A stretch of DNA of 64,000 bases, taken from positions 62,001 to 126,000 of the IMG/VR virus record IMGVR_UViG_3300017971_000190; one strand, 5' to 3'. The translations under genes and the position numbers were made by a program. Positions 167 through 54,439 of the stretch are shown in pieces. The notes beneath the pieces were generated by a model, which made no database searches, was not told the DNA's origin, and worked only from the letters and a program-made list of their open reading frames with translations. Within the stretch, counting starts at the first letter, position 1; each line of letters opens with the position of its first letter.

Positions 167-254
167 CAAACACAGTTTAATTACCCTTTCTTTTTTCTTT
201 AGCTCCCTTTTGTAAAACTAATTTGTTGGTCAATTAAAGTAGGAGAAGACCCAT

Positions 255-599
255 ATGGAACAGCCTACATGTGTTTATTTGGTTTACTGTGATAATTTGT
301 TTACAGGATTGACTGACTTACCGACACTAGAAAGAATATTTCTCAGTCAAGAAAAGGCGGAAGCTTACTTGGCTAAAAACCCTCGTCCTGGACAAATTGA
401 AAAGTGGTTTCTAGAAGATTTTTTCGAGAAAAACTCTGAAAATAAGAGGGTAAGTACAATAAATACAAAAGATACTTACGATCACGAAGTCCTTGCAAAA
501 GAAAATGAAGAAATTAAAGAGAGAACTAAACGCTTACGGGAAGCAGATCAAAAAAGGAAGAATCAGCGGATAAAACACCGTACCCCTAACTGGACGTGA
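255..599 (+). CDS. hypothetical phage protein
   Basis: AGGAG RBS at 241-245; N-terminal VYLV...IFLSQEKAEAY pattern similar to 13339..13866; stop overlaps the next start. Confidence 0.7.
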   Translation: MEQPTCVYLVYCDNLFTGLTDLPTLERIFLSQEKAEAYLAKNPRPGQIEKWFLEDFFEKNSENKRVSTINTKDTYDHEVLAKENEEIKERTKRLREADQKRKNQRIKHRTPNWT

Positions 600-1414
600 A
601 CAAAATGTTTAAAGAAACAGCTTACCACCGCTACCTTTGGTACGTACTGCGACATAAATGGTACGTGGCGTTAGAATGTTGGAAGGAAGGTTTGTACTGG
701 GCAGCTCTAGTGCACGACTGGAGCAAGTTTTTACCTGACGAATTTATCCCTTATGCTCGTCATTTTCATGGGCCACAAGCTAAAGAAAACTTGTCTGCTG
801 AAAAAGGTAAAAGCGGTTACAAGAAACCAGTGAAGACGAATGATTCTTCTTTCGATCAAGCGTGGCTTCGGCACACTAGACGTAACCCTCACCATCCCGA
901 ATACTGGGTTATGGGGAGAGTAGGAGAAGAAGCTACACCATTCCCTATGCCAGAAAAGTATGTACGTGAAATGGTCTGTGACTGGCGTGGGGCTGGGCGA
1001 GCACAAAATAATCCAGTACCTACTCACGAATGGTATCTATCTAATTTAGACCGACTACTTCTACATCCTCAAACTCAAGCTTTGATAGAAGATACTCTAG
1101 ATGTATTTAGAACGGTTATTGGGACCGCTGAAAATACTGCTAAAGGTGGAGAAACAGTTAGAGTTCTTACTGCTGCTAGTGGTTTTAACAGGGTAGAGGT
1201 TGATTTTCAAGTTGCTCCCAGTTTTACTGTAGAAAGTGGGGATTTAGTTTGTTTGCATAATAGTAATAAAGAGGTAAGACCTTTTATCCGTTATAAATAT
1301 GATAAACCGAAAATGATTACTAGATTAATGTCAAGCGCAATTCGAAAAGTTGGAATTTTTAATATCGATTACGCAGCACTGCTTATAGACCAAACCGAAA
1401 ATAAGGAAATTTAA
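596..1414 (+). CDS. DUF5662-like HD-superfamily protein with C-terminal extension
   Basis: Motifs RHKWYV, HDWSK, AWLRH..RNPHHPEYW and EMVCDW match my recollection of DUF5662 (HD-related). Confidence 0.75.
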   Translation: MNKMFKETAYHRYLWYVLRHKWYVALECWKEGLYWAALVHDWSKFLPDEFIPYARHFHGPQAKENLSAEKGKSGYKKPVKTNDSSFDQAWLRHTRRNPHHPEYWVMGRVGEEATPFPMPEKYVREMVCDWRGAGRAQNNPVPTHEWYLSNLDRLLLHPQTQALIEDTLDVFRTVIGTAENTAKGGETVRVLTAASGFNRVEVDFQVAPSFTVESGDLVCLHNSNKEVRPFIRYKYDKPKMITRLMSSAIRKVGIFNIDYAALLIDQTENKEI

Positions 1415-2125
1415 ATGTCGTCACAGCGTTTCAGTCTTCTCAGCAAACCAGCAATTTTACACTACTTAGAAGCTGATGACATAATTATTGATCCTTTTGA
1501 TCCTGAAAATGTTGGAACAAACAGTTACGACGTTCGATTAGGTCGTCATATTTGGAGAGAACATCGGTTAGATGTTTCTCTTCCTTCTATTCACCAAAAA
1601 TATCTTTATAACCCTTATGATCAAGGACATGTAGAAACACTTTGGCACAAAGAGGAAGCTAGACCAGCCAAAGAAGTTTTAGAAATAAGCTTCATGCGTG
1701 GACATATTAAGGGTATTGATCCAGAGGATTTAATAGTTCTCATCAAACCAGGTGAGAGCATTTTAGCTCACACTCAAGAATTTATTGGTAGTCTTAGTCC
1801 CTTTATAACCACTAAAATGTTTGCTCGTAGCTCAACAGGTAGAAATTTCCTTCATGTATGTGCTGATGCTGGTGTTGGAGATGTAGGATTTGCAAATTTT
1901 TGGACCATGGAAATTTTTAATCGTAGTCGTTATCATACTATTCCTTTAGTGGTAGGTAGACGGTATGCTCAAATGACTTTCTTTGAAATTGAACCAATAG
2001 CTGATAAAGACATGTACTACAACAGAGGTAAATATCAAACTGCTTCTACTGTAGAAGAAATAAGAGCGAACTGGAAGCCTGAAGACATGCTTCCTAAAAT
2101 GTTTAAAGATAGGGAGATCAAGTAA
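1415..2125 (+). CDS. dcd: dCTP deaminase (dUTPase-like trimeric fold)
   Basis: NSYDVRLG, ILAHTQEFIG, ARSSTGR, DVGFANFWTMEI and RYAQMTF correspond to dCTP deaminase motifs. Confidence 0.9.
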   Translation: MSSQRFSLLSKPAILHYLEADDIIIDPFDPENVGTNSYDVRLGRHIWREHRLDVSLPSIHQKYLYNPYDQGHVETLWHKEEARPAKEVLEISFMRGHIKGIDPEDLIVLIKPGESILAHTQEFIGSLSPFITTKMFARSSTGRNFLHVCADAGVGDVGFANFWTMEIFNRSRYHTIPLVVGRRYAQMTFFEIEPIADKDMYYNRGKYQTASTVEEIRANWKPEDMLPKMFKDREIK

Positions 2126-2126
2126 A

Positions 2127-3102
2127 ATGACACCAGAAGAAAAAAATCGAATAGAAATAGGTTTGGATCTTGTTACTAAACGTTTAGCAGAGATTTTAGG
2201 ATTAGATGCTACTAATAAAGAAGTGTTAGAGGAACTATTTGTTAAAGTACAGTGTTATGGAGTAATGGATATAGCCGGTAAAGCAAAAATGGGTAGCACA
2301 CCTTCTGCAGAAGAATACTTAGAAAAATGTACCGAATCCATACTGAATATACAAAAGAATGTTGAAAAATAGTCAATAGAAATACAAATCACATACAATG
2401 GGATTCGTAACAAAATGATCTTGAACAAAACAAAATGACTCAATTTACAACAGTCTCCAAGTTATTCGTAGTCAAATGCAACAAGCACTTGACTCTGTTC
2501 CAGCTTCAGAGGCTAATAAGGATCACTTAAAAATACTAAAATCAACTATTGGCAGGTGGTCAAGTCTACTGGAAGGTGTTTGTCTAATGAGACAAAAAGA
2601 AATTAAGATAATTTCTCAATTGGATCCCAAAGTTGTTAGTCCGCCTTACAGTCCAGAAACTTTAGAACTGGCTAAGAAAGCTGCTGAACAAAAAGGTTGG
2701 TTAGAACGAGCTACCCCGGAAGAGAAGAAAGCTTGGGTAGAAAAACTGGCTAGAGATTTCGCTGCTGCTGGGGAAGCTGAATACAAAGTACTTAGAGAAG
2801 AAGGAATAACAAAAATGCCATCAGAAGAAAAAAGAAAAGAACAACTTCAAAAAGACATCGAGGATGGAAAAGTAGGTCATATGGAACATGACAGTGGTAA
2901 AAATTTACATTATTTAGCTGTTTGTACCTTCGTTTATATGTTGCTTGATAGTGATGCTAGAATGCAAGAAGTTTCCAGAGCTTTAGAATGTGCTCAAGGT
3001 GTAATTAAAGATAAAAATACAGAAATTACGACTGCCAATGTAGCTGCTGCAAAGCTGGCTAAAATATTAGTAGACGAGTTTCTTTGTGAGTCATTAGTTT
3101 GA
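2127..3102 (+). other. two hypothetical CDSs (2127..2372, 2476..3102)
   Basis: Co-directional ORFs in the packed gene chain; no recognisable motif. Confidence 0.6.
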
Positions 3103-3443
3103 TTTCTTCTACCACTACTAAAATTTGGCGACCGAAAACAGAAGGTGAAGTCTGTTGCTGTACCAATTTTCAATGGGGCAGTAATTGTCCCTCTTGTTTT
3201 GGTACTGGTTTTGCAGGTGGTTATGATTGTGTAGGAGTAGCAATACTTGAGGAAAGTTTCAGTTCTTATTACATTAGAGCGTTGTTCCAAATTAAAGTTG
3301 CAGATTTATTTGCTTACAATAATAGTGTTCATCAGGTGAGAACGGTACGACAGATGATGTTTTCAGACAGCTTTGAGATAAAGACAGAAAATCTTAATCT
3401 AATTTTCTACCAAATAGGCAAGTTAGTTGACTTGTTAAAATAA
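3099..3443 (+). CDS. Cys-rich neck/head-tail-connector-like paralog
   Basis: Motif WRPKTEGEVCCC...CPSCFGTGFAGGY, shared with 5207..5782 and the C-terminus of 18024..18923. Confidence 0.45.
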   Translation: MISSTTTKIWRPKTEGEVCCCTNFQWGSNCPSCFGTGFAGGYDCVGVAILEESFSSYYIRALFQIKVADLFAYNNSVHQVRTVRQMMFSDSFEIKTENLNLIFYQIGKLVDLLK

Positions 3444-3453
3444 GGAGACCACT

Positions 3454-4479: not shown

Positions 4480-4480
4480 A

Positions 4481-9522: not shown

Positions 9523-9523
9523 C

Positions 9524-9895: not shown

Positions 9896-11981
9896 GATGA
9901 AAACATTTGAGGAAGAAATGAAAAAGATTCAACTTTGGGAAGGATATGACTGGAATACCCCATCTAAAGCTGTAGTAGCCTCGGATGGAAAAGGTTGTGG
10001 AGCTGTACTTTGGACTGTTGGCCCACACGTTGCATATGTTTTAAATGAAGTGGGACTTAACGAACTTGGTGACTTGGGTTTAGACAACTGTCCTAAAGGA
10101 ATTTGGATTTGGGAAGGAACATCTAAAGTATATCATAGTCCTGACGGAGAAGATGATTGGATGGAATTGTTAGGTGAGTTTAGAAAACCTACGTTTGAGG
10201 AAGGTGAACTAATTTTGGAAAATAAATGTCCAATGGTTAGATACTAAACCACTGCACCCTTTTAACGAAAGTGCTTCTGGTCCAGATTGGGTTAGTTTCG
10301 GTTATGCCCATAGTCTCAGCAAAGAAATAAGTCAAGAAGAACTACATATTAAAATGGAAGAGTGGGGTTGGTTGAGAAAAGAATTGTGCTGCGATAACCC
10401 TTCTTTTGACTTGTATGGTTGGCTTCCTGGAGATTGTGATACGTGTCGAATTTGCTCAAATTGTAATTTTGTAGAAGAGTATAGTTTCGGAACTTGGTTC
10501 ATTGCTCCAAAAGAAGTTGCCGACATTTTTCTAAATAGAGAATTTGAAATAGATTGGGGTGACGAATCTAATTTTGATGTAGAAAAAGGTAATATGGTAT
10601 TCAAAAATGCTCGGTATTAAACCATTCCATAAAGGCGAATCAATATTTATTTGTGCTTTCTGTGGAAAAAGCACTTCCTATTTTCACTGCCCAAACAAAA
10701 GCTGCTCAGCCTACGAAAAAGTAAAAGTGGTAAGACTAGCTGTGATCAAACCTTTTTTGGAGGATGGCAAACGTTTGCGTCTTATTGATGGTTACAAGCT
10801 TGCATCTTCCGCCACTTTTAGAGAAACAATTAAAAACATTTTAGCTAGTCCGTTGCTAAATGCCGCTTACGTAACTCACCTCTACTTTGAAATCCCAAAA
10901 GTTGAACCTTTTGTTTATGATGTAGTTGGGCAGTATTGTTTAACCAATTCTTCTTTTTCGTTGCAAACCGAAGAGAGATTAATTTTGAAAGAAGGATCCA
11001 AATGACTGAGCGACATAAAAGTATGAGTGAAGTCTTTAAAGCGGTTTATGGTCCTCGTCCACGTTCTTGGGATTACTTAAGTGAAGACCTTGATTTTATT
11101 CTTAGTGCTAAACGGAAAGCTCTCGGGATTCCAGACGAAATGTTAGACTCTCAGCTTCCTTACAATGGTCGTACAGACCCTCTTTTTGAAATAGTTAAAA
11201 GTTGTCTCCTACCAGTTGTTGGGGACTCTTTTGACAGTTTTAAAGAATTTGTAGAAGCAGCTAAACGCTTAATTTTTGCTATGAAAGATATGCACGACAA
11301 CGGTTGGTTCGATATTCATATTTTGGAAGAGGCAAATGACGCTTACCTAACCATTTCTGCCACAAGACAGAAACCAAATATGCAGTATTTTACTCGTAAT
11401 TGGCCTCCTCCTGAGGAAGGAAAAATAAAATGAATTTTAAACAAATTGCTTTCACTTGTGGTTACGCTGAAACAGGTCAAGTTGGAACAACAATTTTTCA
11501 AAGACGCTCTAACGAAGAACCTTTAAATACTATCGAAGATGCTTTAAAAGATTTTGCCACAGATTTATTCTTTGTTTGGTGGGACAGTGAGGGTTCTTTT
11601 TACATAAATGAAAAAGAATGTGCTCGGTGTCACCAATCAATTAATAAAATAGATAGTAAACGTTTCCTTGCTTTTGAAGCTTGGGTACTAACTTTAGCTA
11701 CAGCCGACACTAACCACACAGATTGTGAAAATATATCTTGGACGCCTTGGTTAATTTGGTCTCAAATTGCCAAGATACCGTTGGAAGAAACAATTCAAAT
11801 TATAGAAAAAGCTGAAAGTATTTTACCTCTTTTCGTAGAGTTAGAACAGTACGAAGAAGGTTTAGGATCTGAAATTGTGAAAGCTTACAATACTTGGGTA
11901 AACAATAAATCTAAAGACTCACTGGAAGAAAGAAAAGAGGACGCTTTAAAGTTTCACATTAAGGTATTTAAAAATGAATGA
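9885..11981 (+). other. hypothetical CDSs 9885..10247, 10354..10620, 10607..11005, 10936..11433 and 11430..11981
   Basis: Overlapping co-directional ORFs, several with CxxC pairs. Confidence 0.6.
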
Positions 11982-12150
11982 TGTAATTTGGGTAGTAGTT
12001 TTAGTCCTTACTTTCTCCTTGTGGGCAGGAACTTTAATTTATGTGTGGACACTTCCGCCACACGGAAGAAAAGCATTTTGGTTAGGATTTTGGAACATGT
12101 TTGGTTTCAAAAGTTTTTTAGACGATAACAAAGATGACAAATTACACTAA
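11974..12150 (+). CDS. small membrane protein (58 aa)
   Basis: Read manually: MNDVIWVVVLVLTFSLWAGTLIYVW...; fills the gap and overlaps both neighbours. Confidence 0.55.
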   Translation: MNDVIWVVVLVLTFSLWAGTLIYVWTLPPHGRKAFWLGFWNMFGFKSFLDDNKDDKLH

Positions 12151-13866
12151 GCAACAAACTATTGAAGCTCTCCGCAATCCCCAGGTGGGCGATTATTTTT
12201 CAGAAATGATGAACTATCGTATGTGGGTGGTTAAAGTAACACCTAAAATAGTAGTTTATTTTGACGCCATTCCACCTTGTACCGTACCAGATGATTGTAC
12301 AATTATGGAAGTAGCTAGAGATTATTTTGTTGATCATTTCACAAAACCACATTGTTGGGTTCGTCTCATAAGTCATGATGAAAACGTAGCAGGTTGGTTA
12401 GAAAGGTAAACAAAATGGCAATTGAAGATTCAGCTGCTACTATGAGTAGATTAGCATTTTTTGCTGATGCCATCGCTGCTTGTCCGGAAGAAGCACAAGC
12501 TTTGAAAAATGTATTCTTGGAACCTACACCAAATGATGAAAATCCTCCTACATCAGAATTAAAATTAGCAATTACATTATTGGCTAATAAAATAACAAAA
12601 AATCTTTTAATAGAGAAGAATTCTCATCTTGCTATCGAAGCAACAATAGAAGAATTAGCTTTTGGTGATAGTGATGCTGGTAAAAGTGCAGCTAATGCTC
12701 TTAGATGGGCTTCTGGACATTATTATAAATGAAACAACTTCTTTGTAAAACTTGTGATAGTGGTCTCCTCCCTCATTGGGGTCCGTATGGAGACGAAAAA
12801 CTTTGGCAGTGTTTAAGCTGCGATAGTACCAAGGAAATTGAACCACAAGAAGAACAACTGTGGATAGAACTTTTTACTACAGGTTCTTTTTCTTGCCCTT
12901 TTTGTGGTGGAACTTTGGCGCAAAAACGAGTTCGATATCACCATGGTGTTTTAACTCTTCATTGCACCAGTAAAGGTTGCAAGTGGTGGACTTGGTTTTT
13001 CGGCAGTCAGTACAAAAAAGGAAAAACTCGTGACTCAATCCGTACTGGAAGCACTATTGAAGCAAAGTGATTATTATTGTCCTCATTGTTTAGAAACTGG
13101 GCATCTTACTAAGTTGCTTCTGGATTCAGAAGTCAATTTAGTTTGTGTAGCAGGTGAGCACGGTATTGTAGAAAGAGAACTGGCATTTACATGGGAAGAC
13201 GTACAAAATATTGTCACTGTTTTAACAATTAGTAAAGCTGATACTGAAGATCTCAAGAAAATGGTAACAATGACTCAAGAGGCGAGATCTTTAGCCAGAA
13301 AAGTAAGACAACAAAGTCCTCTCATGGAGAGTTAAACTATGAAAATTTACCTTATAGAAAATGGTTACTACAGTGATTACGGTATCGATGCTGTTTTTAC
13401 TTCTCTGGAAGCTGCTAAAAATTATTGTCAATATTATAACGATGATAAAGAAGATGGAATTGATTCTGACACTATTGAGTATCGGTTAGAGTACAGAATA
13501 AAAATAATGGAGACAGACTTAGAAACTCCTCAGGTTCCAAAAGACCTTAAAGGTTTTAGAGTTGTTATTAGTAAGGATGGAGAGACAGCTGTCACAGACA
13601 ATTGTTCCCTTGCAGAAGCGCAAAATAGAAAAAATAAACTAGAATTTTTTGACCCCCAAGAAACTACTAATTTTTGTGCACCTTTTTACCTTCACAGCCG
13701 AAGCCCTGAAGATCAACAACGGCTTACTCGTGTTCCTAGCATGAAATTGTGGGTGTTGGCCAGAGACGAAAAGCACGCAATTAAAATTGTAGCTGAAAAA
13801 CGAGCTGAGGTTTTAGCCTTGAACAAGTGGCCTACTAAGTTCGATCATTACGGTCGTGTTCTGTAA
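12134..13866 (+). other. hypothetical CDSs 12134..12409, 12394..12732, 12729..13070, 13030..13335 and 13339..13866
   Basis: Packed co-directional ORFs; 12729..13070 has two CxxC pairs. Confidence 0.6.
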
Positions 13867-15216: not shown

Positions 15217-15602
15217 AAATGGGTAAAATTGGATACGACAGATTTATTATGTATTGTTCAGACAAAGAGTTGATTGAAATATTAAATTATCTCGGAAAGA
15301 GATTTTTTATTATTACCGAATCAAAAGGTTTTTGGTCTGACAACCCAAAAGACAGGAATAGTGGTGAGTGTATTGCCCTCATGCATAGTGAATTAAGCGA
15401 AGCCTTAGAAGCCGTTAGAAACGATAATCCTCCGAGTAAAAAGATTCCAGAGTTTTCTAACTTAGAAGAGGAACTGGCAGACGTTATTTACAGAGTGTTG
15501 GAATATGCTCATGTTCATAGTTTAAATGTTGGAGGAGCACTCTTAGCAAAAGCCAGATTTAATGCCACTCGACCACACAAACATGGTAACAAGGTTTTTT
15601 AA
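15213..15602 (+). CDS. MazG-like nucleotide pyrophosphohydrolase (all-alpha NTP-PPase)
   Basis: ECIALMHSELSEALEA...LEEELADVIYR...K..FN..R.HKHG.K motif. Confidence 0.85.
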   Translation: MKMGKIGYDRFIMYCSDKELIEILNYLGKRFFIITESKGFWSDNPKDRNSGECIALMHSELSEALEAVRNDNPPSKKIPEFSNLEEELADVIYRVLEYAHVHSLNVGGALLAKARFNATRPHKHGNKVF

Positions 15603-16251
15603 GGGAACAAGAGAGATGAAAATATCAGAACAGCAATTACTAATATTACTTGATATAACAAGACATGTTATTGATTGCAATGTTGTTAATCTAAATTTCG
15701 GATATTCAAAAGAGCACATCATAAAGTTCTATGAAAATATTATGAGTCAACAAAACGAAATAGTCGATACGCATCGTTTTCATTGTCGTAGTGAAGAATA
15801 CCTAAGACTCGCATTAGATTTGTACGAATCTTTAGAAGGCAGCGAGCCTAATTTTAAAGAAAGTGGTATTGGTAAACGTGCAACTGAGATATTGTATCCT
15901 AAACGAGAAGAAACAAAGGAGTCGTAAATGACACCGCAAGAAATGTTTGAGAAAGAACTGCTTAAACTTAAACCAAACATGAAAATGTGTTACGAATACT
16001 GCTCTTTTCTAGTTAAAGAAAAAAGCGATCTACATCTTGGCCCCTTTGCCAAAGCTCTAGCTTGGGCTCATATTGGTGTAGCTTTGGAAAATCCAGGTAA
16101 AGCCATTCCAATTTTTACCTCAACTGCAAAGTTAGAAGAAGTGAAGAAGGGGATTAAAAGAGCAATTGCTCAAGAGCTTCAAAATATAGAAGGGAGAGTT
16201 GACATTGGAGACACAACGATAACATTTTGGCCTCCTTATCAAGAAGAATAA
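15562..16251 (+). other. hypothetical CDSs 15562..15927 and 15928..16251
   Basis: Co-directional ORFs with no recognised motif. Confidence 0.55.
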
Positions 16252-27678: not shown

Positions 27679-28326
27679 ATGTCACAAACCAAAACAAAAT
27701 ACCCCAGGACGTTACACCTTCCTTGGTCCCCGGGAAGAAGTAGGGATGATTTGGTTCTCACTTCCACCTCTCATTTTGAGGGGCAACAAGTTGTAATTAC
27801 TGAAAAAAGAGATGGTGAGAATACCACCATTTATCCTTTCACCGTACACGCTCGTTCTCTAGACTCCGCTTATCATCCTTCCCAAAGTTGGGTACGACAA
27901 CTTCAAGCTCAAATTGGTCACGAAATTCCAGCTGGCTGGAGAATCTGTGGGGAGAACCTTTATGCCGAGCACAGTATTCCCTACCACGTCACCAATTATT
28001 TTGAAGTGTTCTCTATTTGGGATGAAACTAACACGGCTCTAAGCTGGAATGCTACTCAGGAATGGGCAGATCTCTTAAATCTTCTGACAGTTCCTGTTTT
28101 GTTCCAAGGGGAATGGCCCGGAAAAGAGTTTCTAGATGAGCTGTGGCAACATTATTGTCAGAAAATGGATCCTGCCTTGGTTGAAGGATACGTTGTACGG
28201 TTAGCAGGACGTTTTTCTTACGATTCTTTCTCGGCTTCGGTGGCCAAATTTGTTCGTCCCGATCACGTACAAACTGACGAGCACTGGAAAAAGAATTGGA
28301 AGCCTAACCAACTCGTCCAGTCTTGA
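27679..28326 (+). CDS. ATP-dependent RNA ligase family protein
   Basis: KYPRTLHLPWSPG, TEKRDGEN (motif I KxDG), ICGENLYA.HSI, EGYVVR and KFVR..HV motifs. Confidence 0.85.
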   Translation: MSQTKTKYPRTLHLPWSPGRSRDDLVLTSTSHFEGQQVVITEKRDGENTTIYPFTVHARSLDSAYHPSQSWVRQLQAQIGHEIPAGWRICGENLYAEHSIPYHVTNYFEVFSIWDETNTALSWNATQEWADLLNLLTVPVLFQGEWPGKEFLDELWQHYCQKMDPALVEGYVVRLAGRFSYDSFSASVAKFVRPDHVQTDEHWKKNWKPNQLVQS

Positions 28327-28430
28327 CCCCTCCTTTGTAAAACCTTCCTAGACCGCGAGTTGATTTAACTCGCCCAGACCGAAGTTCGTAGAGCGATCGA
28401 AAGACCGAAAAACAAAAGGAGAAGTGTCTC

Positions 28431-30002
28431 ATGATTTTGAAAATCATCCCCATCCGTCCCGCTGGAAGACCACATCTGAAAAATATTAATCGTTACGTAG
28501 AAGGTTCTGAATTTTCAATAGAGCTTCATACGTTTAATGACGAAAAGACGTATGAGGCTTGGCTTGTAGAAAGAACCTCCATAGAAAGTATTGAGCACAG
28601 TACACTAAATATTCACGATTATAAAGGATTGGACAGCTGGCAAGTATTTGTCGTAGATGTTGAGAATTTCTTAGATGGAGACTTTGTTGTTTCTACTCAA
28701 ACCATTCTTTGCAATCGTATATTTCTGCTTAACGACAAGGGAAAGACAGTAGACACATTTAACACAACAAATCCATTAGTATTTCCTAGAAAGCGAGAAA
28801 ATGAAACTAAATTCATAGATGGACATGGAGGTACTGTTGAAATAGAAGATGGAAAAATTAAACATACTACACCATTAAAAAATGTTTTTGAATTAAAAAA
28901 TGTTTTTGATGGACTGAAAGAAAGTGTGGGGCAAGAATTTAGAAAAAGGCAAGAATTCGTAGCAAATTTAACTGAAGAACAAGAAAAAGAACTTGGAGCG
29001 CATTTTTATGGTGGTAACATTGGAGGGAAGGTAGAGGTTATAGAAGGGGTAACAGTCAAACCTTTAACTGTCGATAAACCAACTCCTTGTCCCTCCATTC
29101 TTCATTGGTGTACAGAACTGAAATATCTGGGCGGTAAAAATGTTTGGCCAGAGAATTTAAAAACTTTACTAGCTGCTTTTCAGGAACAGTGCCCCTCTTG
29201 TGGAGCTGCCCTTCGTTACGGTCGTTGTGTTCTTTGTGATAAATCCAAACAAGAATTATTTTCTCACCCGATCAATGAGGTAGTAGGAATTAGAGGGCAA
29301 CGCACTGGTAGCAGCTTTCTATCGGCCATAGCTGCTACCTACCAGTTACAAAAAATACTCTCTTTAGATATGAGTTTAAGTACCTACTATGATATGCCTC
29401 CTACGGAATTTGAAATGGTACTAGTAGATCCAGGAAAACATATTTGGAATCACTTTTGGGAATTAATACACAATTCACCTTGGTTTGAGCAATACTGGAG
29501 TTTCTTAAAAAATGCAGTTAATTGGGGTTTCAGTAGACCTAGCAATGATAAAGCTATTTTTACTGCCAACGAAAAGACGAATTTAATTGTACGAAGAGGA
29601 GGAGTGGAAGAGAACTACAAAGGAAAAACCAGAATTTTTGCTGCCATAGATGATCCAGATTGGGTAGATTGTTATGGTAATAAAGATAAACGGGTTCCTA
29701 TAGTAGATATTTATACAAGCCTTAAGAGTAGCCTTTCAACGGTGAAAAAGAAAGCTAACGATCAAAATTATAAATTGCAACCCTTGTTGTGGTTAATGGG
29801 TCCTCCTAACGGAGAAGGTGTAACTAAAAGTCTTCTTAGAAAAATAAAACAAGCTAAAAAGAAAAAAGTCAACCAACTAATTCTACATCAACCAACTTGG
29901 GAAATTAATCCAGAAACCAGCGAGGAAGAACTACGGAAAGAAGCCAGAAATGATGCAGAATTTCGTCGTGACTTTGGTGCTGAATTTGTAAAAGTGAAAT
30001 AA
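28431..30002 (+). CDS. fusion of an N-terminal LLNDKGKT domain and a degenerate terminase-large-subunit ATPase domain
   Basis: NEVVGIRGQRTGSS (Walker A-like, lacking Lys), SPWF, KGKTRIFAAIDD (Walker B DE to DD), HQPTWEINP and RRDFGAEF follow large-phage TerL order; ends before any nuclease domain. Confidence 0.7.
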   Translation: MILKIIPIRPAGRPHLKNINRYVEGSEFSIELHTFNDEKTYEAWLVERTSIESIEHSTLNIHDYKGLDSWQVFVVDVENFLDGDFVVSTQTILCNRIFLLNDKGKTVDTFNTTNPLVFPRKRENETKFIDGHGGTVEIEDGKIKHTTPLKNVFELKNVFDGLKESVGQEFRKRQEFVANLTEEQEKELGAHFYGGNIGGKVEVIEGVTVKPLTVDKPTPCPSILHWCTELKYLGGKNVWPENLKTLLAAFQEQCPSCGAALRYGRCVLCDKSKQELFSHPINEVVGIRGQRTGSSFLSAIAATYQLQKILSLDMSLSTYYDMPPTEFEMVLVDPGKHIWNHFWELIHNSPWFEQYWSFLKNAVNWGFSRPSNDKAIFTANEKTNLIVRRGGVEENYKGKTRIFAAIDDPDWVDCYGNKDKRVPIVDIYTSLKSSLSTVKKKANDQNYKLQPLLWLMGPPNGEGVTKSLLRKIKQAKKKKVNQLILHQPTWEINPETSEEELRKEARNDAEFRRDFGAEFVKVK

Positions 30003-32856: not shown

Positions 32857-35800
32857 GTGTCTTCCCTTCCCAAAACTTACGGTCGTTTTTGGCTTAAAGA
32901 TTCTACTTGGCATGTGGCTTGTGAACCACATGTCATGATTAGATTAAAGCGTACTTTTGACAAAGTACGAAAAGACCAGTACGATGTAATTACTCTAGCA
33001 GACTCTCCAGAAACCTGCCGTGAACTTCTTTGGTTCACCCTTCGTTTTCCTCTCACTGCTATTGATGAACCCACCCAATTTTACCTGGAAGAGCAAGCTG
33101 AAAAACATGAAAGGGAGGAGAAGGAAGTACACCTGCTACTGAGCGGTGAGGTGGAACCCAAAAACTTTAAACTTCGTTTGCCTCTTCGCCCATACCAACG
33201 TATTGCCACCGATTTAGCTCTTAAAACAGGAGGATTATTAATTGCTGACGATCTCGGAACTGGAAAGACTGCTTGTATTATTGGTATGTTTACAGATCAA
33301 CGTACCAGACCAGCTTTAGTTGCTACTCTTGCACATCTCACTTATCAGTGGCAAGCTGAAATAAATCGCTTCGCTCCTGAACTTACCACTCACATAATTA
33401 AGCAGGGAAAGTTTTACCAATTTTCTAAAGACAACATTTTTCCAGATGTTCTTATAACTAGTTATTACAAGTTGCATAGTTGGGCTGAGCATTTAGCTGG
33501 AAAAATTCGTTGTGTAGCCTTTGATGAAATACAAGAACTAAGACATGGAGAAATGAGTTTAAAAGGTTCAGCATCTTTTCATATTTCTGATCAAGCATCT
33601 TTCAGAGTCGGCGCTAGCGCTACTCCATTTTATAATTACGGCGCTGAAATGTTTAATATTATGAAAGCCCTTCGTCCTGGAGTACTAGGGACTTTCTCAG
33701 AATTTGCTAGGGAGTGGCTCAGCTGGGATGGTAAAAAACTAAAAGATCCCAAAGCATTTGGAACCTATCTTCGCGATCATGGTTATATGATTCGTAGAAC
33801 CAGAGAAGATATTAGGAGAACTATTCCCACCCTTACTAAAGTTCCACATTGGATTGATTTTGATTTTGAAGCTCTCGACGCTTTAAAATCATCGGCAGAT
33901 GAATTGGCTCTTTCTATTGTTCGATATGATCCAACTATTGATGAAGAGACACAAAAAGACAAATTCGCTAGAGAAAATGAATTCAAGCAACTTTTACGAC
34001 AAGCAACTGGAATTGGAAAAGCTCCCTATGTTGCAGAATTTGTCCGCATGCTTGTGGAAACTGGTGAACAAGTAGTTGTATTTTTGTGGCACCGCGAATG
34101 TTATTCGATACTAAAAGATCGTCTTAGTGATTATAAACCATCTATGTATACAGGTTCGGAAAGTCCACAACGAAAAAGAAAACAGTTTAATCGTTTCGTG
34201 AGAAAAGAAACTCCAATATTGTTAATTTCTCTCCGCTCAGGCGCTGGACTAGACGGTCTTCAATATCATTGCCGCACTGTCGTTTTTGGAGAATTAGATT
34301 GGTCCCCCGGAGTTATGGAGCAATGCTTAACAATGGAAACAGAAATTTTAACTAAAAAAGGATTTTGCAAAGAAAATGAAGTAGAAGTTGGAGATGAAGT
34401 AGCCGCTTTTGATATAAAAGATAGTAGTATTAAATGGAAGCCAGTTCTGCATAAAGTTTGTAGAAAGTTAGGTAAAAAAGAAAAACTTTTTTACACAGAG
34501 ACGAAAAAAATGGCTTTTAAAGTTACTGGAGATCATAGACTTATTGTGCGGCGTAGTAGACGCACAATTTCAGGAGAAAATAGGTCTGATTGGAAATTTA
34601 AATTAGCAAAGGACGTAGCTGGTAAAAATAGACGATTTGTTCCTACGTGTGGTTTGGAAAAAACTATAGGTGTTGATCTCACAAGTTATGAATTAAGGTT
34701 TTTAGGGTGGTATATTTCTGACGGAAGTTTTAATGGTAATCAAGTAACCATTTACCAAGCTGCTCATCAACCTTGGAATGATGATATTGTAGAAGTTTTA
34801 AATGGTTGTGAATTTACTTGGTATAGATATGAAAGGATTAATACCAACGGTAATTTGTTATATATGTATTGTGTACCAAAAGGGAACGTACAACGTTGGA
34901 CTAAAAATGAAATAAGTACATTCATAAAAATGAAGAAAAAAGGAGTTTCTTATAAAGAAATAGAGGAAAAAATTAATAGACCTAGAAGTAGTCTTTATAA
35001 AAGGTGGGCAAAATTTAAATCGGGTTACAAATATGAATTGATTCCTCCCAAAAATCGAACTACTAAGGGTTGGGAATATTTAGAAAAATATTTAGACAAA
35101 AATTTAAGTCCACTTCTAGAAAACGTTACTCGTGAACAACTAATAAATATTATTCACGGACTTTATATGGGGGATGGTACTAAAAATGAAAGTCGTGAAA
35201 ATGTGGTAATGATTGGCGGTACTAACAAAATTCTTTTCGATCGTCTGCAATCATTATGTGTAAGACGTGGGATGTCTGCTACTATATCTACACACAAAAA
35301 ACCAAAAGATCCGAATAGAAAAATCTCACATACTATTTATATATCTAAATTTGAAGATGCTTACATACCCGGTCCTAATAAACCTAATGTATTGTCAGAA
35401 GTGGAACCAACAAAAAATGAGAAAGTTTGGTGTGTTACAAATGAATTAGGAACATTGGTTACCAGGTATAATGGTAAAGTTGCTGTAGTTGGAAATTGTA
35501 TAGGTCGGGTACATAGAGACGGACAACTAGATGACGTAACAGCTTACTTTTTGTTAGCCAATGGGGGAAGTGATCCTTACGTTTCAGAACTGTTAGGAAT
35601 TAAAAGAGCCCAAATAGAAGGCGTCAAAGATCCAGAAGGTGCCGTTCTTCCCAATTACGATTTAGATAACGTTTCTGTAAAAGAACTAGCGCTTAACTAC
35701 ATGAACCAACGACAAGAAGGAAAGGCGGTAGAAGTCATGCCAACAAACAGAAAAAATTTAGAAACTTATCCTTTGGAAAGTGAAGAGAGTAACATTAAAG

Positions 35801-36042
35801 CCTACTTAACGGACGAAATTAAAATTGAGTTGTCTGAAGGTTTAGCCAATTTTACAAAGGAGAATGATCTGCTAGATCTTATTGACAAAGAACTACTAAC
35901 AGGTTTCTTAAATTCCCTTGGTTTAAAACCCTCTAAAAAGCTGCATAAAAAATTGGTTAAAAATTTGTGCCTGTCTCTTTTAGAAGCTGCTTGTAGAGCG
36001 ACTATCAATGATCGAAAAGTAATTAAAACACATGACTTGTAG
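32857..36042 (+). CDS. SNF2-family helicase/ATPase, intein-containing
   Basis: LIADDLGTGKT (motif I), FDEIQELR (II), SATP (III), GAGLDGLQ (V) and Q/CIGRVHRDGQ (VI, split by the intein). Confidence 0.92.
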   Translation: MSSLPKTYGRFWLKDSTWHVACEPHVMIRLKRTFDKVRKDQYDVITLADSPETCRELLWFTLRFPLTAIDEPTQFYLEEQAEKHEREEKEVHLLLSGEVEPKNFKLRLPLRPYQRIATDLALKTGGLLIADDLGTGKTACIIGMFTDQRTRPALVATLAHLTYQWQAEINRFAPELTTHIIKQGKFYQFSKDNIFPDVLITSYYKLHSWAEHLAGKIRCVAFDEIQELRHGEMSLKGSASFHISDQASFRVGASATPFYNYGAEMFNIMKALRPGVLGTFSEFAREWLSWDGKKLKDPKAFGTYLRDHGYMIRRTREDIRRTIPTLTKVPHWIDFDFEALDALKSSADELALSIVRYDPTIDEETQKDKFARENEFKQLLRQATGIGKAPYVAEFVRMLVETGEQVVVFLWHRECYSILKDRLSDYKPSMYTGSESPQRKRKQFNRFVRKETPILLISLRSGAGLDGLQYHCRTVVFGELDWSPGVMEQCLTMETEILTKKGFCKENEVEVGDEVAAFDIKDSSIKWKPVLHKVCRKLGKKEKLFYTETKKMAFKVTGDHRLIVRRSRRTISGENRSDWKFKLAKDVAGKNRRFVPTCGLEKTIGVDLTSYELRFLGWYISDGSFNGNQVTIYQAAHQPWNDDIVEVLNGCEFTWYRYERINTNGNLLYMYCVPKGNVQRWTKNEISTFIKMKKKGVSYKEIEEKINRPRSSLYKRWAKFKSGYKYELIPPKNRTTKGWEYLEKYLDKNLSPLLENVTREQLINIIHGLYMGDGTKNESRENVVMIGGTNKILFDRLQSLCVRRGMSATISTHKKPKDPNRKISHTIYISKFEDAYIPGPNKPNVLSEVEPTKNEKVWCVTNELGTLVTRYNGKVAVVGNCIGRVHRDGQLDDVTAYFLLANGGSDPYVSELLGIKRAQIEGVKDPEGAVLPNYDLDNVSVKELALNYMNQRQEGKAVEVMPTNRKNLETYPLESEESNIKAYLTDEIKIELSEGLANFTKENDLLDLIDKELLTGFLNSLGLKPSKKLHKKLVKNLCLSLLEAACRATINDRKVIKTHDL
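34324..35496 (+). mobile_element. intein with LAGLIDADG homing endonuclease (391 aa)
   Basis: Starts CLTMETEILT (block A), has VTGDHR (block B), FLGWYISDG and HGLYMGDG (LAGLIDADG), and VWCVTNELGTLVTRYNGKVAVVGN followed by +1 Cys. Confidence 0.92.
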
Positions 36043-43562: not shown

Positions 43563-43666
43563 TTCTTGTTCTTTCGCTGATAGATCGTTCTTCCTGTTTG
43601 TTAATACATACTAGATGGGTAGCAACGTGAACCGAAGCAGGACGCATCAGCGAGAGGCAGGAAACG
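43563..43666 (+). other. long irregular RNA hairpin between the tube gene and 43670
   Basis: TTCTTG(T)TCTTTCGCTGAT pairs with ATCAGCGAGAGGCAGGAA (18 bp with GU pairs and one bulge); inner stem TCCTGTTT/AAGCAGGA. Confidence 0.65.
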
Positions 43667-50606: not shown

Positions 50607-50635
50607 TTGACAAATGCGCTGTCGGCAGGTAGACT
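50607..50635 (+). promoter_or_regulatory. sigma70-type promoter overlapping an inverted repeat
   Basis: TTGACA (50607-50612), 17 nt, TAGACT (50630-50635). Confidence 0.6.
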
Positions 50636-50677
50636 TCTTATTGTCTTACGGTAGTTTGTCTACCTGCCGACGAGCGC
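50616..50677. repeat. long inverted repeat (14 bp perfect plus 5 bp beyond a bulge)
   Basis: GTCGGCAGGTAGAC (50621-50634) and GTCTACCTGCCGAC (50658-50671), flanked by GCGCT/AGCGC. Confidence 0.9.
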
Positions 50678-50697
50678 TACAACAGGGTGCTCACCAC

Positions 50698-50739
50698 GGG
50701 CCATCGAGGATGCCGGTAACACTCTCGATGGCCCTTTTT
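50698..50739 (+). terminator. intrinsic terminator-like hairpin
   Basis: GGGCCATCGAG/CTCGATGGCCC 11-bp stem followed by TTTTT. Confidence 0.8.
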
Positions 50740-50768
50740 ATATCTCCACTTTGTAAAACCTCACTATC

Positions 50769-51390: not shown

Positions 51391-51419
51391 TTGCTTTTTT
51401 GGCAACCTGGTGCTAAGTT
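51391..51419 (+). promoter_or_regulatory. sigma70-type promoter with extended -10
   Basis: TTGCTT, 17 nt ending TGC, TAAGTT; upstream of 51499. Confidence 0.55.
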
Positions 51420-51498
51420 TGTAAATGTATAGGTAGAAGACCGCCTTCTTTATTGTGACTTTTTGGCGGTCAAAAGGAAACTTTAGTGAGGTAGCATT

Positions 51499-52276: not shown

Positions 52277-52321
52277 AATCGAGTTCCTTCCAAAATACAG
52301 GTTCTAGCACCTAGTAATACG

Positions 52322-52350
52322 AGCCTGGCACACTTTTGAGATCGTGTCAA
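52322..52350 (-). promoter_or_regulatory. possible divergent sigma70-type promoter
   Basis: Minus strand TTGACA, 17 nt ending TGC, CAGGCT. Confidence 0.4.
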
Positions 52351-52479
52351 GTTTTCTTCTCTTTTTAATCGCACTGTAATTTTATTTTACAAATACAAAA
52401 ATAATTTTTAGTTGAAGGCAGTAATTTCAAATAGTTGGACTTATTCCTAAAAATAGGACAGTCTACTTTTCTTTTTTGG

Positions 52480-52508
52480 TTGACAAACCGTTGTTTTACT
52501 GTTACAAG
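52480..52508 (+). promoter_or_regulatory. sigma70-type promoter of parB
   Basis: TTGACA, 17 nt ending TGT, TACAAG; RBS GGAGA before ATG 52554. Confidence 0.6.
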
Positions 52509-52553
52509 ATAATAGAGAGTTGAAAACAAAGTTTCTACAACGGAGAAATTAAA

Positions 52554-53591
52554 ATGACCGAAACCAACGAAATTCCTACCGACAACAAGAAGATCAAGCA
52601 CAGCCACTACAGCCTGTACCCTGAGGCTTTTCGTCCGATGATGGTACCCATTCAGGAGGAGGAGGATGCCACCGTTCGGATGAATATCCGAAACGAGTTC
52701 AGTGAAGATGAGGAGGACTGGGAGGATTTCAAGAATTCCATCAAAGAGTTTGGGATTCTTCAGCCTCTCTGTGTGGCTCCCAACCCCGACAAAACCAACG
52801 GTGTCAAGTATCTGATCATTTTCGGTGAGCGGCGTTGGCGCGCAGCTCGGGAGCTGACCGAAGAGGGGCATCCTGTTCGTGTTCCTTACGTCATCGATAC
52901 CCCTGCCAAGGACGCCGATGAGGAGGAGACGAAGCTGCGTCAGTTCAAGCTCATGGCGTTGGAGAATATCCAGCGTAAGGACTTGACTCACATGGAAAAG
53001 GCTCGTCTCATTTCCACTCTCGAAGACAATGGAATGTCCGTCGAGAAAATCTCGGACATGCTCAACAAGAGTCTGCCGTGGGTCTACAACTACCGCACGC
53101 TCGCGAAAGACGCCAACGAAGAGGTGCAGCAGAAGCTGGCGGAAGGTCGGATCACACAGCAAGCAGCGCTGGACATCGTAAGAAATCATGATCGCGAGTC
53201 TCAGGCAGCCGCGCTGAAGACCGTTCTTTCTCAGGCCAAGTCTCGGGCTGCTACGACGCGAGCTGCCCAGGGCATCAGCGGAAAGAAGATGAACAGCACG
53301 CCTCCGAAGAAATACGTCCAGGCTGTGGTGGACACCCTGCGTGAGGCGGAAGACCTGGAAGGCGTCATGAGTCTGGACGACGCACAGATCCTGCTCGTCA
53401 CCGTGATGCAGTGGGTGCAGGGGAAGAAGGCCGACGTGACGCTGAAGAAGCAGCTCAACGCAGCTTTCGACGGTCAGCTCAACACCCGTGACATGTTCGA
53501 CAACCGGCCGCGTGTGAAGAAGGAGAAGGTGTCAAGCAAGCTAGAGGAGAGCGACAAGCAGACGGAGGAGAACACTTCCGACAGCGAGTAA
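52554..53591 (+). CDS. parB: ParB/RepB/Spo0J family protein
   Basis: SIKEFGILQPL, YLIIFGERRWRAA (CTP-binding box), ENIQRKDL..MEKA and a following HTH (SVEKISDMLNKSLPWVYN). Confidence 0.9.
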   Translation: MTETNEIPTDNKKIKHSHYSLYPEAFRPMMVPIQEEEDATVRMNIRNEFSEDEEDWEDFKNSIKEFGILQPLCVAPNPDKTNGVKYLIIFGERRWRAARELTEEGHPVRVPYVIDTPAKDADEEETKLRQFKLMALENIQRKDLTHMEKARLISTLEDNGMSVEKISDMLNKSLPWVYNYRTLAKDANEEVQQKLAEGRITQQAALDIVRNHDRESQAAALKTVLSQAKSRAATTRAAQGISGKKMNSTPPKKYVQAVVDTLREAEDLEGVMSLDDAQILLVTVMQWVQGKKADVTLKKQLNAAFDGQLNTRDMFDNRPRVKKEKVSSKLEESDKQTEENTSDSE

Positions 53592-53603
53592 TTAATTTCA
53601 CTC

Positions 53604-53813
53604 TACCCGTTGCGTGCTAGGGACGTAGGTTCAAACCAACAACGGGTAACGAGACCAATTAGCAATTGGTCTAGTGAGGACGAGACCTCATGATGAGAAG
53701 CCGAGTAGCTCTCGGTAAAAAACGGGAGTAGTTACGACCTAACGTACCGTGCCGTGAGACACGTGGAAATAAGCTGGAGATTAACAATCGAAGAAAGCGG
53801 ATTTCCAATCTCA
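53604..53813 (+). ncRNA. candidate structured non-coding RNA (unassigned family)
   Basis: Consecutive stems TACCCGTTG/CAACGGGTA, AGACCAATT/AATTGGTCT, TGAGG/CCTCA, CCGAG/CTCGG, GTTA/TAAC, CGTG/CACG and GAGATT/AATCTC in a GC-rich gap with no ORF. Confidence 0.6.
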
Positions 53814-53839
53814 CATTTTTAATTTGGAGAAAAAGTCAA

Positions 53840-54197
53840 ATGCCAAAAAAAGCAACTTATTATTGTATTCGTTGTCTTCTGAAGGGAAGAGAAACTTTTT
53901 GGTCACCAGAAGACGACTTCCCTGATCAGTGTCCTCATTGTAAAATGCATACTTGGAGAACAGACTACGCAGGAGTTATTGAGTACATCAAAAACATGAG
54001 AACAGAGGCAGATGCAATTGAAGAGACGTTCAACAAAATCACAGGAAAAGGTAGAAGAACCTAATCAATCAGGACTGTATTGTCCAAAGCACGGATTTAT
54101 TCCAGAAGGGAAAATTACAACTGTAAAAACTTGTGGAATCTGCATGGAAGAACGTAGTTGTTCAGCAAACGACGCAACAATTTTGCAACGCAGATAA
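53840..54197 (+). other. two small zinc-ribbon CDSs (53840..54064, 54012..54197)
   Basis: CIRC...CPHC and CPKH...CGIC; GGAGA RBS. Confidence 0.6.
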
Positions 54198-54212
54198 AAA
54201 GGAGAAACTATC

Positions 54213-54404
54213 ATGTACAAGTGCGACAAGTGTGGAAACAGTACCGGAGCTGGCCAGGAGCTGATTTGAAGGGTAGTGCAAACCCGCTACAAGGAGTACC
54301 CGGAGCGCAAGGACAAGCGAGGGAACATCATCGATGAGGGTGGTGATGGGCGAGAAATCGTCAAGGAGCTGAAGCTCTGCCCCTCATGTGCTACCGACGC
54401 TTAG
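54213..54404 (+). pseudogene. zinc-ribbon gene interrupted by an in-frame TGA (pseudogene or readthrough)
   Basis: AAGGAG RBS; MYKCDKCG...ELI*RVVQTR...KELKLCPSCATDA, with TGA at 54267-54269 between the two CxxC halves. Confidence 0.75.
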
Positions 54405-54439
54405 ACCTTCTTTTCTCTCCTTCCACTTTGTAAAAACTG

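What the first reader, a model, noticed from the sequence alone, without database searches (positions are those of the whole stretch)
203..54437. Recurrent intergenic box (C/T)TTTGTAAAA(A)C after pyrimidine tracts: candidate antitermination or operator signal
Four intergenic copies: CTCCCTTTTGTAAAAC (203-218), CCCTCCTTTGTAAAAC (28328-28343), CTCCACTTTGTAAAAC (50744-50759) and TTCCACTTTGTAAAAAC (54421-54437). Each lies just after a gene end or terminator-like U-tract and before the next gene, always on the + strand. It differs by one base from the boxA variant CTTTGAAAAC of many bacterial rRNA operons. Inference: a Nus-dependent antitermination site or a phage regulator site.
Basis: partly seen in the sequence, partly recalled or inferred. 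Interest (0 to 1): 0.6.

Follow-up and report, generated by a model that had tools for sequence, protein, structure and literature searches.

The report
Promoter-like box of a giant phage
The repeated box is real and most likely marks the start of transcription units in an uncultivated giant phage that carries its own sigma factor; it is probably not an antitermination signal, so it is an ordinary kind of feature in a little-known virus.

Summary
The window is part of a 221.7-kb phage record (GC about 37%). In the whole record TTTGTAAA is the commonest 8-mer in intergenic DNA: 12 sense copies against 0.9 expected. The wider form TTTGT[A/T]AA occurs 15 times in the sense direction and once antisense. 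Every copy points the same way as the gene downstream, including two copies in divergent spacers. Several copies lie a few bases after strong terminator hairpins.

The box reads as a -10-like element: TAAAAC, six bases, then a pyrimidine-purine step. Two genes without a ribosome-binding site start at or within 3 nt of that predicted start point. A close relative keeps the box at the same place. A distant syntenic relative keeps GTTTGTTAA in the orthologous spacer.

A longer assembly of the same phage encodes a 440-aa sigma-70 family factor. Its gene is itself preceded by a box variant. I found no phage RNA polymerase.

Best reading (confidence 0.55): a phage-specific promoter core, probably read by host polymerase carrying the phage sigma. 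The Nus/boxA antitermination reading fits poorly. No transcript ends could be examined, so the start sites are inferred. This is a new member of a known kind and of modest interest.

The parts
203..218 (+). Box copy 1 (CTCCCT + TTTGTAAAAC). It lies 44 nt after the previous gene and 37 nt before the ATG at 255, with an AGGAG ribosome-binding site in between. A run of small genes follows, including DUF5662 and dCTP deaminase.
28328..28343 (+). Box copy 2 (CCCTCC + TTTGTAAAAC). It starts 2 nt after the stop codon of an RNA-ligase gene (27679-28326) and ends 88 nt before a terminase-like paralogue (28431-30002). The same box is present at the same place in relative L023.
50744..50759 (+). Box copy 3 (CTCCAC + TTTGTAAAAC). 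The ATG of an HNH endonuclease gene without a ribosome-binding site follows 9 nt later, at 50769.
50698..50739 (+). Strong terminator-like hairpin (12-bp stem) plus TTTTT. It ends 4 nt before the pyrimidine tract of box copy 3.
54421..54437 (+). Box copy 4 (TTCCAC + TTTGTAAAAAC). It lies 81 nt before a conserved 372-aa gene (54518-55636).
54440..54468 (+). Host-type sigma-70-like promoter (TTGACA, 17 nt, TAGCAT, preceded by TG). It starts 2 nt after box copy 4, so two promoter types may sit in tandem here.
43597..43606 (+). Box variant TTTGTTAATA after a CT-rich tract, 72 nt before the 432-aa gene (43670). The block GTTTGTTAA is identical in the orthologous spacer of the syntenic relative L021.
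51418..51427 (+). Box variant TTTGTAAATG, 80 nt before the 119-aa gene (51499). The orthologous spacer of L021 holds TTGTTAAAT.
52384..52393 (-). Box copy TTTGTAAAAT on the - strand, in the divergent spacer before ParB. It points towards two small - strand ORFs (52276-51855).
12741..12751 (+). Not part of the family. This 11-mer match lies inside a gene, in frame, and encodes LCKTC. The match at 63311-63321 is the same case.

Best explanation
The box is the core of a phage-specific promoter. Its sequence is a pyrimidine-rich tract, usually CTCC, then 0-2 bases, then TTTGTAAAAC, with looser copies of the form TTTGT[A/T]AA. TAAAAC acts like a -10 hexamer, and the preceding TTTG may act like an extended -10. 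Transcription would start about 7 nt downstream at a pyrimidine-purine step. Host core RNA polymerase would be directed there most probably by the phage's own 440-aa sigma-70 family factor, which switches on particular transcription units. These include head and packaging genes as well as several DNA-metabolism genes.

Shown by the data: enrichment, strand rule, position, partial conservation, and presence of the sigma gene.
For: 1. Enrichment and direction. TTTGTAAA is the top intergenic 8-mer, with 12 sense and 1 antisense copies against 0.86 expected. TTTGT[AT]AA occurs 15 times sense and once antisense in intergenic DNA, and its density there is about 7 times that in coding DNA.

2. The box follows the downstream gene, not the upstream one. 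It is on the - strand in the - arm (135089, 177858, 180642, 186065, 209469). In three divergent spacers it points to the gene it precedes, with no co-oriented gene upstream: window 52384-52393(-), genome 204995(+), and the spacer before the sigma gene.

3. It lies at unit starts. It sits directly after strong hairpin plus T-run terminators at 16103 and at window 50751, and after weaker ones at 186065 and 62210.

4. Geometry. In the eight best copies the base 7 nt after TAAAAC is a purine in 8 of 8 (A in 7), and the base before it is a pyrimidine in 7 of 8. The YspA/SLOG gene starts exactly there (TAAAAT, 6 nt, ATG; Pfam aligns from residue 1). The HNH gene starts 3 nt later. Both have the worst ribosome-binding-site scores in the genome.

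5. Conservation. Relative L023 (RNA ligase 93% identical) ends in TGA-tccctcc-TTTGTAAA at the same place. The syntenic relative L021 (52% GC) keeps GTTTGTTAA as the longest identical block in the orthologous spacer, and has TTGTTAAAT in a second orthologous spacer.

6. A reader exists. Contigs 100% and 99.99% identical to the record's last 12.2 kb extend 9.1 kb past its end. They encode a sigma factor: Pfam Sigma70_r2 at 30.9 bits (cut-off 24), phrog_351 at 7e-21, and an alignment to SigA regions 2-4 at E 1e-12. Three more boxes lie in those 9 kb, one of them 31 nt before the sigma start codon.

7. A separate class of host-type promoters (TTGAC., 16-18 nt, TA...T) is also present, 9 sense and 0 antisense in intergenic DNA. 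The box is therefore a second class.

8. Jumbo phages without their own polymerase commonly encode sigma factors that are thought to recruit host polymerase (PMC7824862).
Against: No conserved -35 element appears 16-18 nt upstream, although the sigma seems to have a region 4. The hexamer ends in C where sigma-70 family -10 elements almost always have T. The ten-base core is unusually exact: one-mismatch variants add almost no intergenic copies. That pattern is more typical of a protein-binding site or a single-subunit polymerase promoter than of a sigma promoter.

Only about 8 strict and about 18 loose copies were found in about 231 kb. About 30% of genes have weak ribosome-binding sites, so two leaderless-looking starts are only suggestive. 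The TTGTTAAA variants fit an ordinary host extended -10 (TGnTAAAnT) and may belong to a different class from TTTGTAAAAC. The link between this sigma and this motif rests on co-occurrence only.
Confidence: 0.55

Rival explanations
1. The boxes are ordinary host-sigma promoters of the extended -10 type that need no phage factor. On this reading the apparent specificity only reflects what this host's main sigma prefers.
For: The variants TTGTTAAAAT, TTGTTAAACT and TTGTTAAATT read as TGnTAAAnT, a textbook extended -10. The record also holds host-type -35/-10 promoters.
Against: The main form TTTGTAAAAC places TG directly against the hexamer and ends in C at the position where T is nearly invariant. 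The ten bases and the CTCC tract are conserved far beyond what a -10 element needs. The phage carries its own sigma.
Confidence: 0.12
2. The box is an operator. A sequence-specific phage DNA-binding protein (a repressor, an activator or a ParB/KorB-like protein) binds it and controls nearby promoters.
For: The core is exact with few degenerate copies. Three boxes lie next to or inside sigma-70-like promoters: window 54440, genome 177811 and genome 209478. A ParB-family protein with an HTH domain is encoded at window 52554-53591.
Against: The position relative to those promoters is inconsistent: upstream, inside the spacer, or 50 nt downstream. Five or more boxes have no sigma-70-like promoter nearby. 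The site is not palindromic and not repeated locally. The strict co-orientation and the start-codon geometry are not expected of an operator.
Confidence: 0.12
3. The box acts in RNA. It could be a processing site, a site for an RNA-binding protein, or a boxA-like site that loads NusB/NusE for antitermination.
For: The motif is strand-specific and could lie in leaders. It resembles the recalled Gram-positive rRNA boxA core CTTTGAAAAC (from memory, not tested). The CU-rich tract could pair with ribosome-binding sites.
Against: At 16103 and at window 50751 the box lies directly after strong terminators, with no room for a promoter, and a start codon follows 6-9 nt after it. In divergent spacers there is no upstream co-oriented transcript. 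There is no conserved partner hairpin. Rfam finds nothing. The resemblance to boxA requires an insertion and lacks the upstream G/T-T-C. I give Nus/boxA specifically no more than 0.04.
Confidence: 0.1
4. The box is the promoter of an unrecognised phage RNA polymerase, single-subunit or otherwise non-canonical, encoded by one of the large unannotated genes or in the part of the genome not examined here.
For: The core is unusually exact. In four copies conservation runs on to a CNNNCTA block, and window 50751 even reads CTCACTAT, as in T7-group promoters (recalled, not tested). Many proteins of 700-1500 aa have no annotation. The 221.7-kb record is incomplete: CheckV estimates 63%, and a 298-kb contig of the phage exists.
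Against: There is no hit to T7-type polymerase or RpoB models. There is no DxDGD catalytic motif in any frame, and no HDS-type motif except in the DNA polymerase and one 540-aa protein. A sigma factor is present, which points to use of the host core enzyme.
Confidence: 0.06

Closest known systems
Phage-encoded sigma-70 family factors that redirect host RNA polymerase to phage-specific promoters. Examples are the sigma factors of jumbo phages lacking their own polymerase (PMC7824862) and, from memory, SPO1 gp28 and gp33/34 and phiEco32 gp36.
   Same: A phage gene for a sigma with regions 2-4. A short phage-specific motif, different from the host consensus, that is intergenic and co-oriented with genes. 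Host-type promoters present alongside it.
   Different: The motif itself (CT tract + TTTGTAAAAC) matches none I know of. No -35 partner is visible. The pairing of this sigma with this motif is inferred, not shown.
T4-type late promoters (TATAAATA at -10, read by gp55 with gp33 and the sliding clamp; from memory)
   Same: A promoter made of a -10-like element only, without a -35. The core TGTAAA resembles TATAAA. The box lies before head and packaging genes.
   Different: The sigma found here is full length with regions 2-4, not a gp55-like stub. No gp33 or gp55 homologue was looked for specifically. The box also precedes non-structural genes.
boxA of rRNA operons and lambda nut sites (NusB/NusE loading, antitermination)
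   Same: A short pyrimidine-rich, strand-specific motif containing CTTTG...AAAAC.
   Different: The box lies after terminators rather than after promoters. It has no boxB hairpin and no rRNA context. A start codon follows within 6-9 nt in two copies. The sequence differs by an insertion and in the 5' half.
T7-group single-subunit polymerase promoters (from memory)
   Same: An exactly conserved motif of about 20 nt. Four copies end in a (C/T)(A/C)CTA block before the predicted start.
   Different: No such polymerase gene was found in the 231 kb examined. Conservation downstream of the ten-base core is only partial.

Membership tests
boxA / Nus-dependent antitermination site | The sequence matches the boxA consensus of the host or of lambda/rrn | tested here: inconclusive
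   The host is unknown, so its boxA could not be read. Against the recalled variants (GCTCTTTAACAA; TTCTTTGAAAAC) the box needs a 1-nt insertion and lacks the 5' G/T-T-C. A literature string search gave nothing relevant.
boxA / Nus-dependent antitermination site | The site lies in a transcribed leader, downstream of a promoter and upstream of the terminators to be overridden | tested here: not met
   At 16103 and at window 50751 the box begins 5-10 nt after a strong hairpin plus T-run and is followed by a start codon within 6-9 nt. In divergent spacers no upstream co-oriented gene exists.
boxA / Nus-dependent antitermination site | An accompanying boxB-type hairpin or an rRNA operon context | tested here: not met
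   There is no conserved structure next to the box in folds or in the 18-site alignment. There are no Rfam hits and no rRNA in the window.
boxA / Nus-dependent antitermination site | The RNA binds NusB/NusE | not testable with these tools
   Needs a binding assay with the proteins of the (unknown) host.
Sigma-factor-dependent bacterial/phage promoter | Intergenic, and co-oriented with the downstream gene | tested here: met
   15 sense and 1 antisense copies in intergenic DNA. The orientation flips with the gene arm and within divergent spacers.
Sigma-factor-dependent bacterial/phage promoter | A -10-like hexamer with a start site about 7 nt downstream | tested here: inconclusive
   TAAAAC/T has the A at the second position but usually C at the last. 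A pyrimidine-purine step lies at +7 in 7-8 of 8 copies, and two genes without ribosome-binding sites start there. No transcript ends were available.
Sigma-factor-dependent bacterial/phage promoter | A -35 element 16-18 nt upstream | tested here: not met
   The 18-site alignment shows only pyrimidine and T richness, with no hexamer. Reading TTGTAA itself as a -35 fails, because no -10 follows at 16-18 nt (inspection).
Sigma-factor-dependent bacterial/phage promoter | A cognate sigma factor is available | tested here: met
   L035:6619-7941 encodes a 440-aa protein with Sigma70_r2 above the Pfam cut-off, phrog_351 at 7e-21 and an alignment to SigA regions 2-4. The contig is 100% identical to the record over 12.2 kb. 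Its specificity for the box was not tested.
T7-like single-subunit polymerase promoter | A phage single-subunit RNA polymerase gene | tested here: not met
   PF00940 gave no hit, although the control genomes cannot validate that search. The motif scan found none. The genome was only partly examined.
parS / ParB centromere site | A palindromic site of about 16 bp, independent of orientation | tested here: not met
   The box is not palindromic and is strictly oriented with transcription. A ParB gene is present.

The most novel reading that the evidence does not exclude
The full 22-nt signal (CT tract, exact TTTGTAAAAC, CNNNCTA) is not a conventional sigma promoter. It would be the recognition site of a new kind of phage transcription machinery. 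That could be an unrecognised polymerase, or a sigma that reads a -10 without the canonical final T and without a -35. Part of its output would be leaderless mRNAs, in a roughly 300-kb phage whose sigma most resembles cyanobacterial ones.
Probability: 0.12. Interest if true: 0.5.

Novelty: new member of a known kind. Interest (0 to 1): 0.3.

Why it matters
If the box is the promoter of the phage's own sigma factor, it gives a first map of transcription units for a deeply branching, uncultivated phage of about 300 kb. Most of that phage's genes have no annotation. It would also provide a concrete sigma-promoter pair that can be tested in vitro. It would not change any general principle, because phage sigma factors with private promoters are well known.

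Tried and rejected
Reads and expression:
I did not try to reach reads by another route, and read laying was not used.

Search for relatives:
- There was no near match in the phage collection.
- The terminase-like protein found no close relative in IMG/VR.
- A 25-nt conserved leader pattern found only the source contig in JGI metagenomes.
- Relatives P0002 and P0004 (81% identical for the 372-aa protein) have no retrievable DNA.
- Distant relatives show no box enrichment: L021, L022, L024, L025, L026-L034 and whole records G001-G005.
- Single look-alikes in L024 and L025 (TGTAAAACC 5 nt before an ATG; CTCTCACC-TTGTAAAAG after a tRNA) come from phages that share only 2-3 genes with this one. I did not count them.

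Search for a polymerase:
- Nothing was found with Pfam RpoB or T7 models, catalytic-motif scans, or PHROGs, Pfam and PDB sequence searches of the large unknown proteins.

Readings rejected by inspection:
- TTGTAA as a -35: no -10 follows at 16-18 nt.
- The reverse complement as a ribosome-binding site for antisense genes: no start codons follow.
- An NtcA site (GTA-N8-TAC): the second half is CTA, not TAC.
- sigma-54, DnaA box, Bacteroidetes -7 motif and parS.

Literature:
- A string search for the motif returned only unrelated papers.

Full report
**What the window is.** The window is bases 62001-126000 of a 221,679-bp IMG/VR virus record (Ga0180438_10000059; CheckV completeness 63%; GC about 37%). 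Genes run on the + strand up to about 128.8 kb and on the - strand after that. Recognisable genes include:
- family A DNA polymerase, topoisomerase II, an SNF2 helicase and ParB;
- the true large terminase (181133-183463, -), the portal (178285-180603, -) and the head protease.

The window's 'terminase' (28431-30002) is a weaker paralogue of the same PHROG. The nearest characterised phages are distant jumbo phages at 21-25% identity. The window has no tRNA or Rfam hit. The rest of the record has 11 tRNAs.

**The observation.** The four quoted strings are exactly at the stated places. YTTTGTAAAAC occurs 6 times in the window against 0.45 expected. Three of those matches are coding accidents. 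Two encode LCKTC in frame, and one lies antisense inside a gene.

I called genes crudely, by longest non-overlapping ORFs, and compared about 19.5 kb of intergenic DNA with 202 kb of coding DNA. Both were oriented by the local direction of transcription.
- TTTGTAAA is the most frequent intergenic 8-mer: 12 sense and 1 antisense copies, against 0.86 expected from composition.
- The exact 10-mer TTTGTAAAAC occurs 5 times sense and never antisense in intergenic DNA. Allowing one mismatch adds almost nothing.
- The looser form TTTGT[A/T]AA occurs 15 times sense and once antisense.

**The family.** Eight strict copies stand far above background in a matrix scan. In genome coordinates they are 16103+, 62210+, 90335+, 112751+, 116428+, 135089-, 177858- and 186065-. 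Subtract 62000 for window coordinates. Looser copies precede:
- the 432-aa gene (window 43597) and the 119-aa gene (window 51418);
- the portal (180642-);
- a 259-aa gene (37812), a 367-aa gene (209469-) and a + strand gene island in the - arm (204995+);
- two small - strand ORFs in the + arm (window 52384-52393, -).

Most copies carry a pyrimidine tract with CTCC immediately upstream. Long CT-rich tracts on the sense strand are a wider feature of this phage's spacers.

**Anatomy.** The box always points the same way as the gene downstream of it. In the - arm it is on the - strand. In three divergent spacers (before the - strand ORFs beside ParB, before the + island at 205 kb, and before the sigma gene) there is no co-oriented gene upstream at all. 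This argues against a 3'-end signal such as a terminator or the end of a read-through transcript.

At 16103 and at window 50751 the box follows a strong hairpin plus T-run by a few bases. The 102-nt windows containing these hairpins fold at about -36 kcal/mol. Weaker hairpins precede 186065 and 62210.

Read as a -10-like hexamer, TAAAAC is followed by six bases and then a purine in 8 of 8 strict copies (A in 7). A pyrimidine precedes that purine in 7 of 8. Two genes begin at or next to that point and have no ribosome-binding site:
- The YspA/SLOG gene (ATG 16118). Pfam aligns it from residue 1.
- The HNH gene (ATG at window 50769). Its catalytic motif starts at residue 21 and no other start codon is available.

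These two have the worst ribosome-binding-site scores in the genome. However, about 30% of genes score weakly, so this is suggestive only.

No -35 hexamer is conserved. Only T-richness around -30 and pyrimidines from -23 to -17 are visible. A separate class of host-type promoters (TTGAC., 16-18 nt, TA...T) is present, 9 sense and 0 antisense. One of these starts 2 nt after box copy 4.

**Relatives.** Close relatives are rare.
- A metagenome contig (L023, RNA ligase 93% identical) ends in TGA-tccctcc-TTTGTAAA. The box is therefore kept at the same place after the same stop codon.
- The neighbouring contig (L009) begins 25 nt after the box and shows a conserved leader.
- A syntenic relative with 52% GC (L021; nine shared genes at 32-54% identity) lacks the exact box.
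- L021 nevertheless keeps GTTTGTTAA, after a CT-rich tract, as the longest identical block in the spacer before the homologue of the 432-aa gene. It also has TTGTTAAAT before the homologue of the 119-aa gene.
- More distant relatives show no enrichment.

The signal is therefore specific to this lineage, with limited but real conservation.

**A reader for the box.** The record itself has no hit to sigma-70 regions 2 or 4, the general sigma model, RpoB or T7-type polymerase. It has no two-barrel catalytic motif in any frame.

The same proteins also occur on a 298,061-bp contig. Two contigs, 100% and 99.99% identical to the record's last 12.2 kb, run 9.1 kb past its end. That stretch encodes a 440-aa sigma-70 family protein:
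- Sigma70_r2 at 30.9 bits against a cut-off of 24;
- phrog_351 'RNA polymerase sigma factor' at 7e-21;
- residues 209-432 align to SigA regions 2-4 at E 1e-12;
- the best NCBIfam rows are cyanobacterial sigma subfamilies, far below their cut-offs.

The 9.1 kb holds three more boxes, all intergenic and sense. One is an exact TTTGTAAAAC. One (TTTGTTAAAG) lies 31 nt before the sigma's TTG start, in a 53-nt divergent spacer. Jumbo phages without their own polymerase typically encode sigma factors that are thought to recruit the host enzyme (PMC7824862).

**Interpretation.** The best reading is a phage-specific promoter core, probably read by host core polymerase with the phage sigma (confidence 0.55). 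It would head transcription units that include head and packaging genes (boxes at 186065, 180642 and 177858) as well as nucleotide and DNA-metabolism genes. In some places it would sit in tandem with host-type promoters.

Weak points:
- There is no -35 element.
- The hexamer ends in C at a position that is normally T.
- The core is unusually exact.
- The TTGTTAAA variants may simply be host extended -10 promoters.

The boxA idea fails on position (directly after terminators, directly before start codons, and in divergent spacers) and on the lack of a partner hairpin. Its sequence resemblance rests on a recalled consensus and needs an insertion.

**Verdict.** The antitermination reading is not supported. 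The feature is most likely a promoter class of a phage that carries its own sigma factor. It is a new member of a known kind, of modest interest, and directly testable by 5'-end mapping and in vitro transcription.

Noticed in passing
L035:6619-7941 (+), 9.1 kb beyond the end of the 221.7-kb record: The phage encodes a 440-aa sigma-70 family factor with regions 2-4. Its best family rows are cyanobacterial sigma subfamilies, well below their cut-offs. That is a lead that the host may be a cyanobacterium.
   Followed up: partly
L035:1664-3418 (+) and L035:3589-4060: A 584-aa TnpB/Cas12f-like protein (TNB domain, transposase PHROGs). Next to it is an internal direct repeat, about 75% identical and offset by about 146 nt.
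   Followed up: no
window 32857-36042 (+): The SNF2-type helicase carries Hint and LAGLIDADG domains in its C-terminal half, so it probably contains an intein with a homing endonuclease.
   Followed up: no
window 50607-50739 (+): A sigma-70-like promoter (TTGACA, 17 nt, TAGACT) is followed by a long inverted repeat and then a strong terminator, with no ORF. This may be a small structured RNA of about 100 nt. Rfam has no match.
   Followed up: partly
window 28431-30002 (+) versus genome 181133-183463 (-): There are two terminase-large-subunit-like genes. The window copy is a weak paralogue (phrog_17415, 6.5e-16). The - arm copy is the strong one (2.8e-94) and sits next to the portal.
   Followed up: partly
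window 27679-28326 (+): An RNA ligase family protein (PF09414) with thousands of homologues at 53-60% identity in metagenomes. It is far better conserved than its neighbours.
   Followed up: no
window 12729-12760 and 63300-63330 (+): Two small ORFs share the in-frame peptide LCKTC, encoded by the same 11 bases as the box. These are zinc-finger-like CxxC motifs. They inflate the raw motif count.
   Followed up: yes
whole record, sense strand of spacers (e.g. genome 25581-25614, 25911-25950, 177863-177896, 206038-206066): Long CT-rich tracts (up to 40 nt, with CCCTCC and CCTTCC units) lie on the transcribed-sense strand of intergenic DNA. They are about five times denser there than in sense coding DNA, and not all are next to a box.
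   Followed up: partly
L021:12888-14623: The syntenic relative has a 1.7-kb non-coding stretch packed with short repeats of the gccaagcc / gacttgcc type.
   Followed up: no
L022:11105-11186, 11955-12033, 15577-15653: A more distant relative (58% GC, with a gene bearing a Sigma70_r4 domain) has its own recurrent spacer motif. It is a palindrome, CTCTTACTACGCCATAGTAAGAG, and in two of the three spacers it directly follows TTGAC.
   Followed up: no
genome 3372-7648, 59131-59211, 127818-128147: Eleven tRNA genes lie in the record outside the window. Longer assemblies of the same phage exist, up to 298,061 bp.
   Followed up: partly
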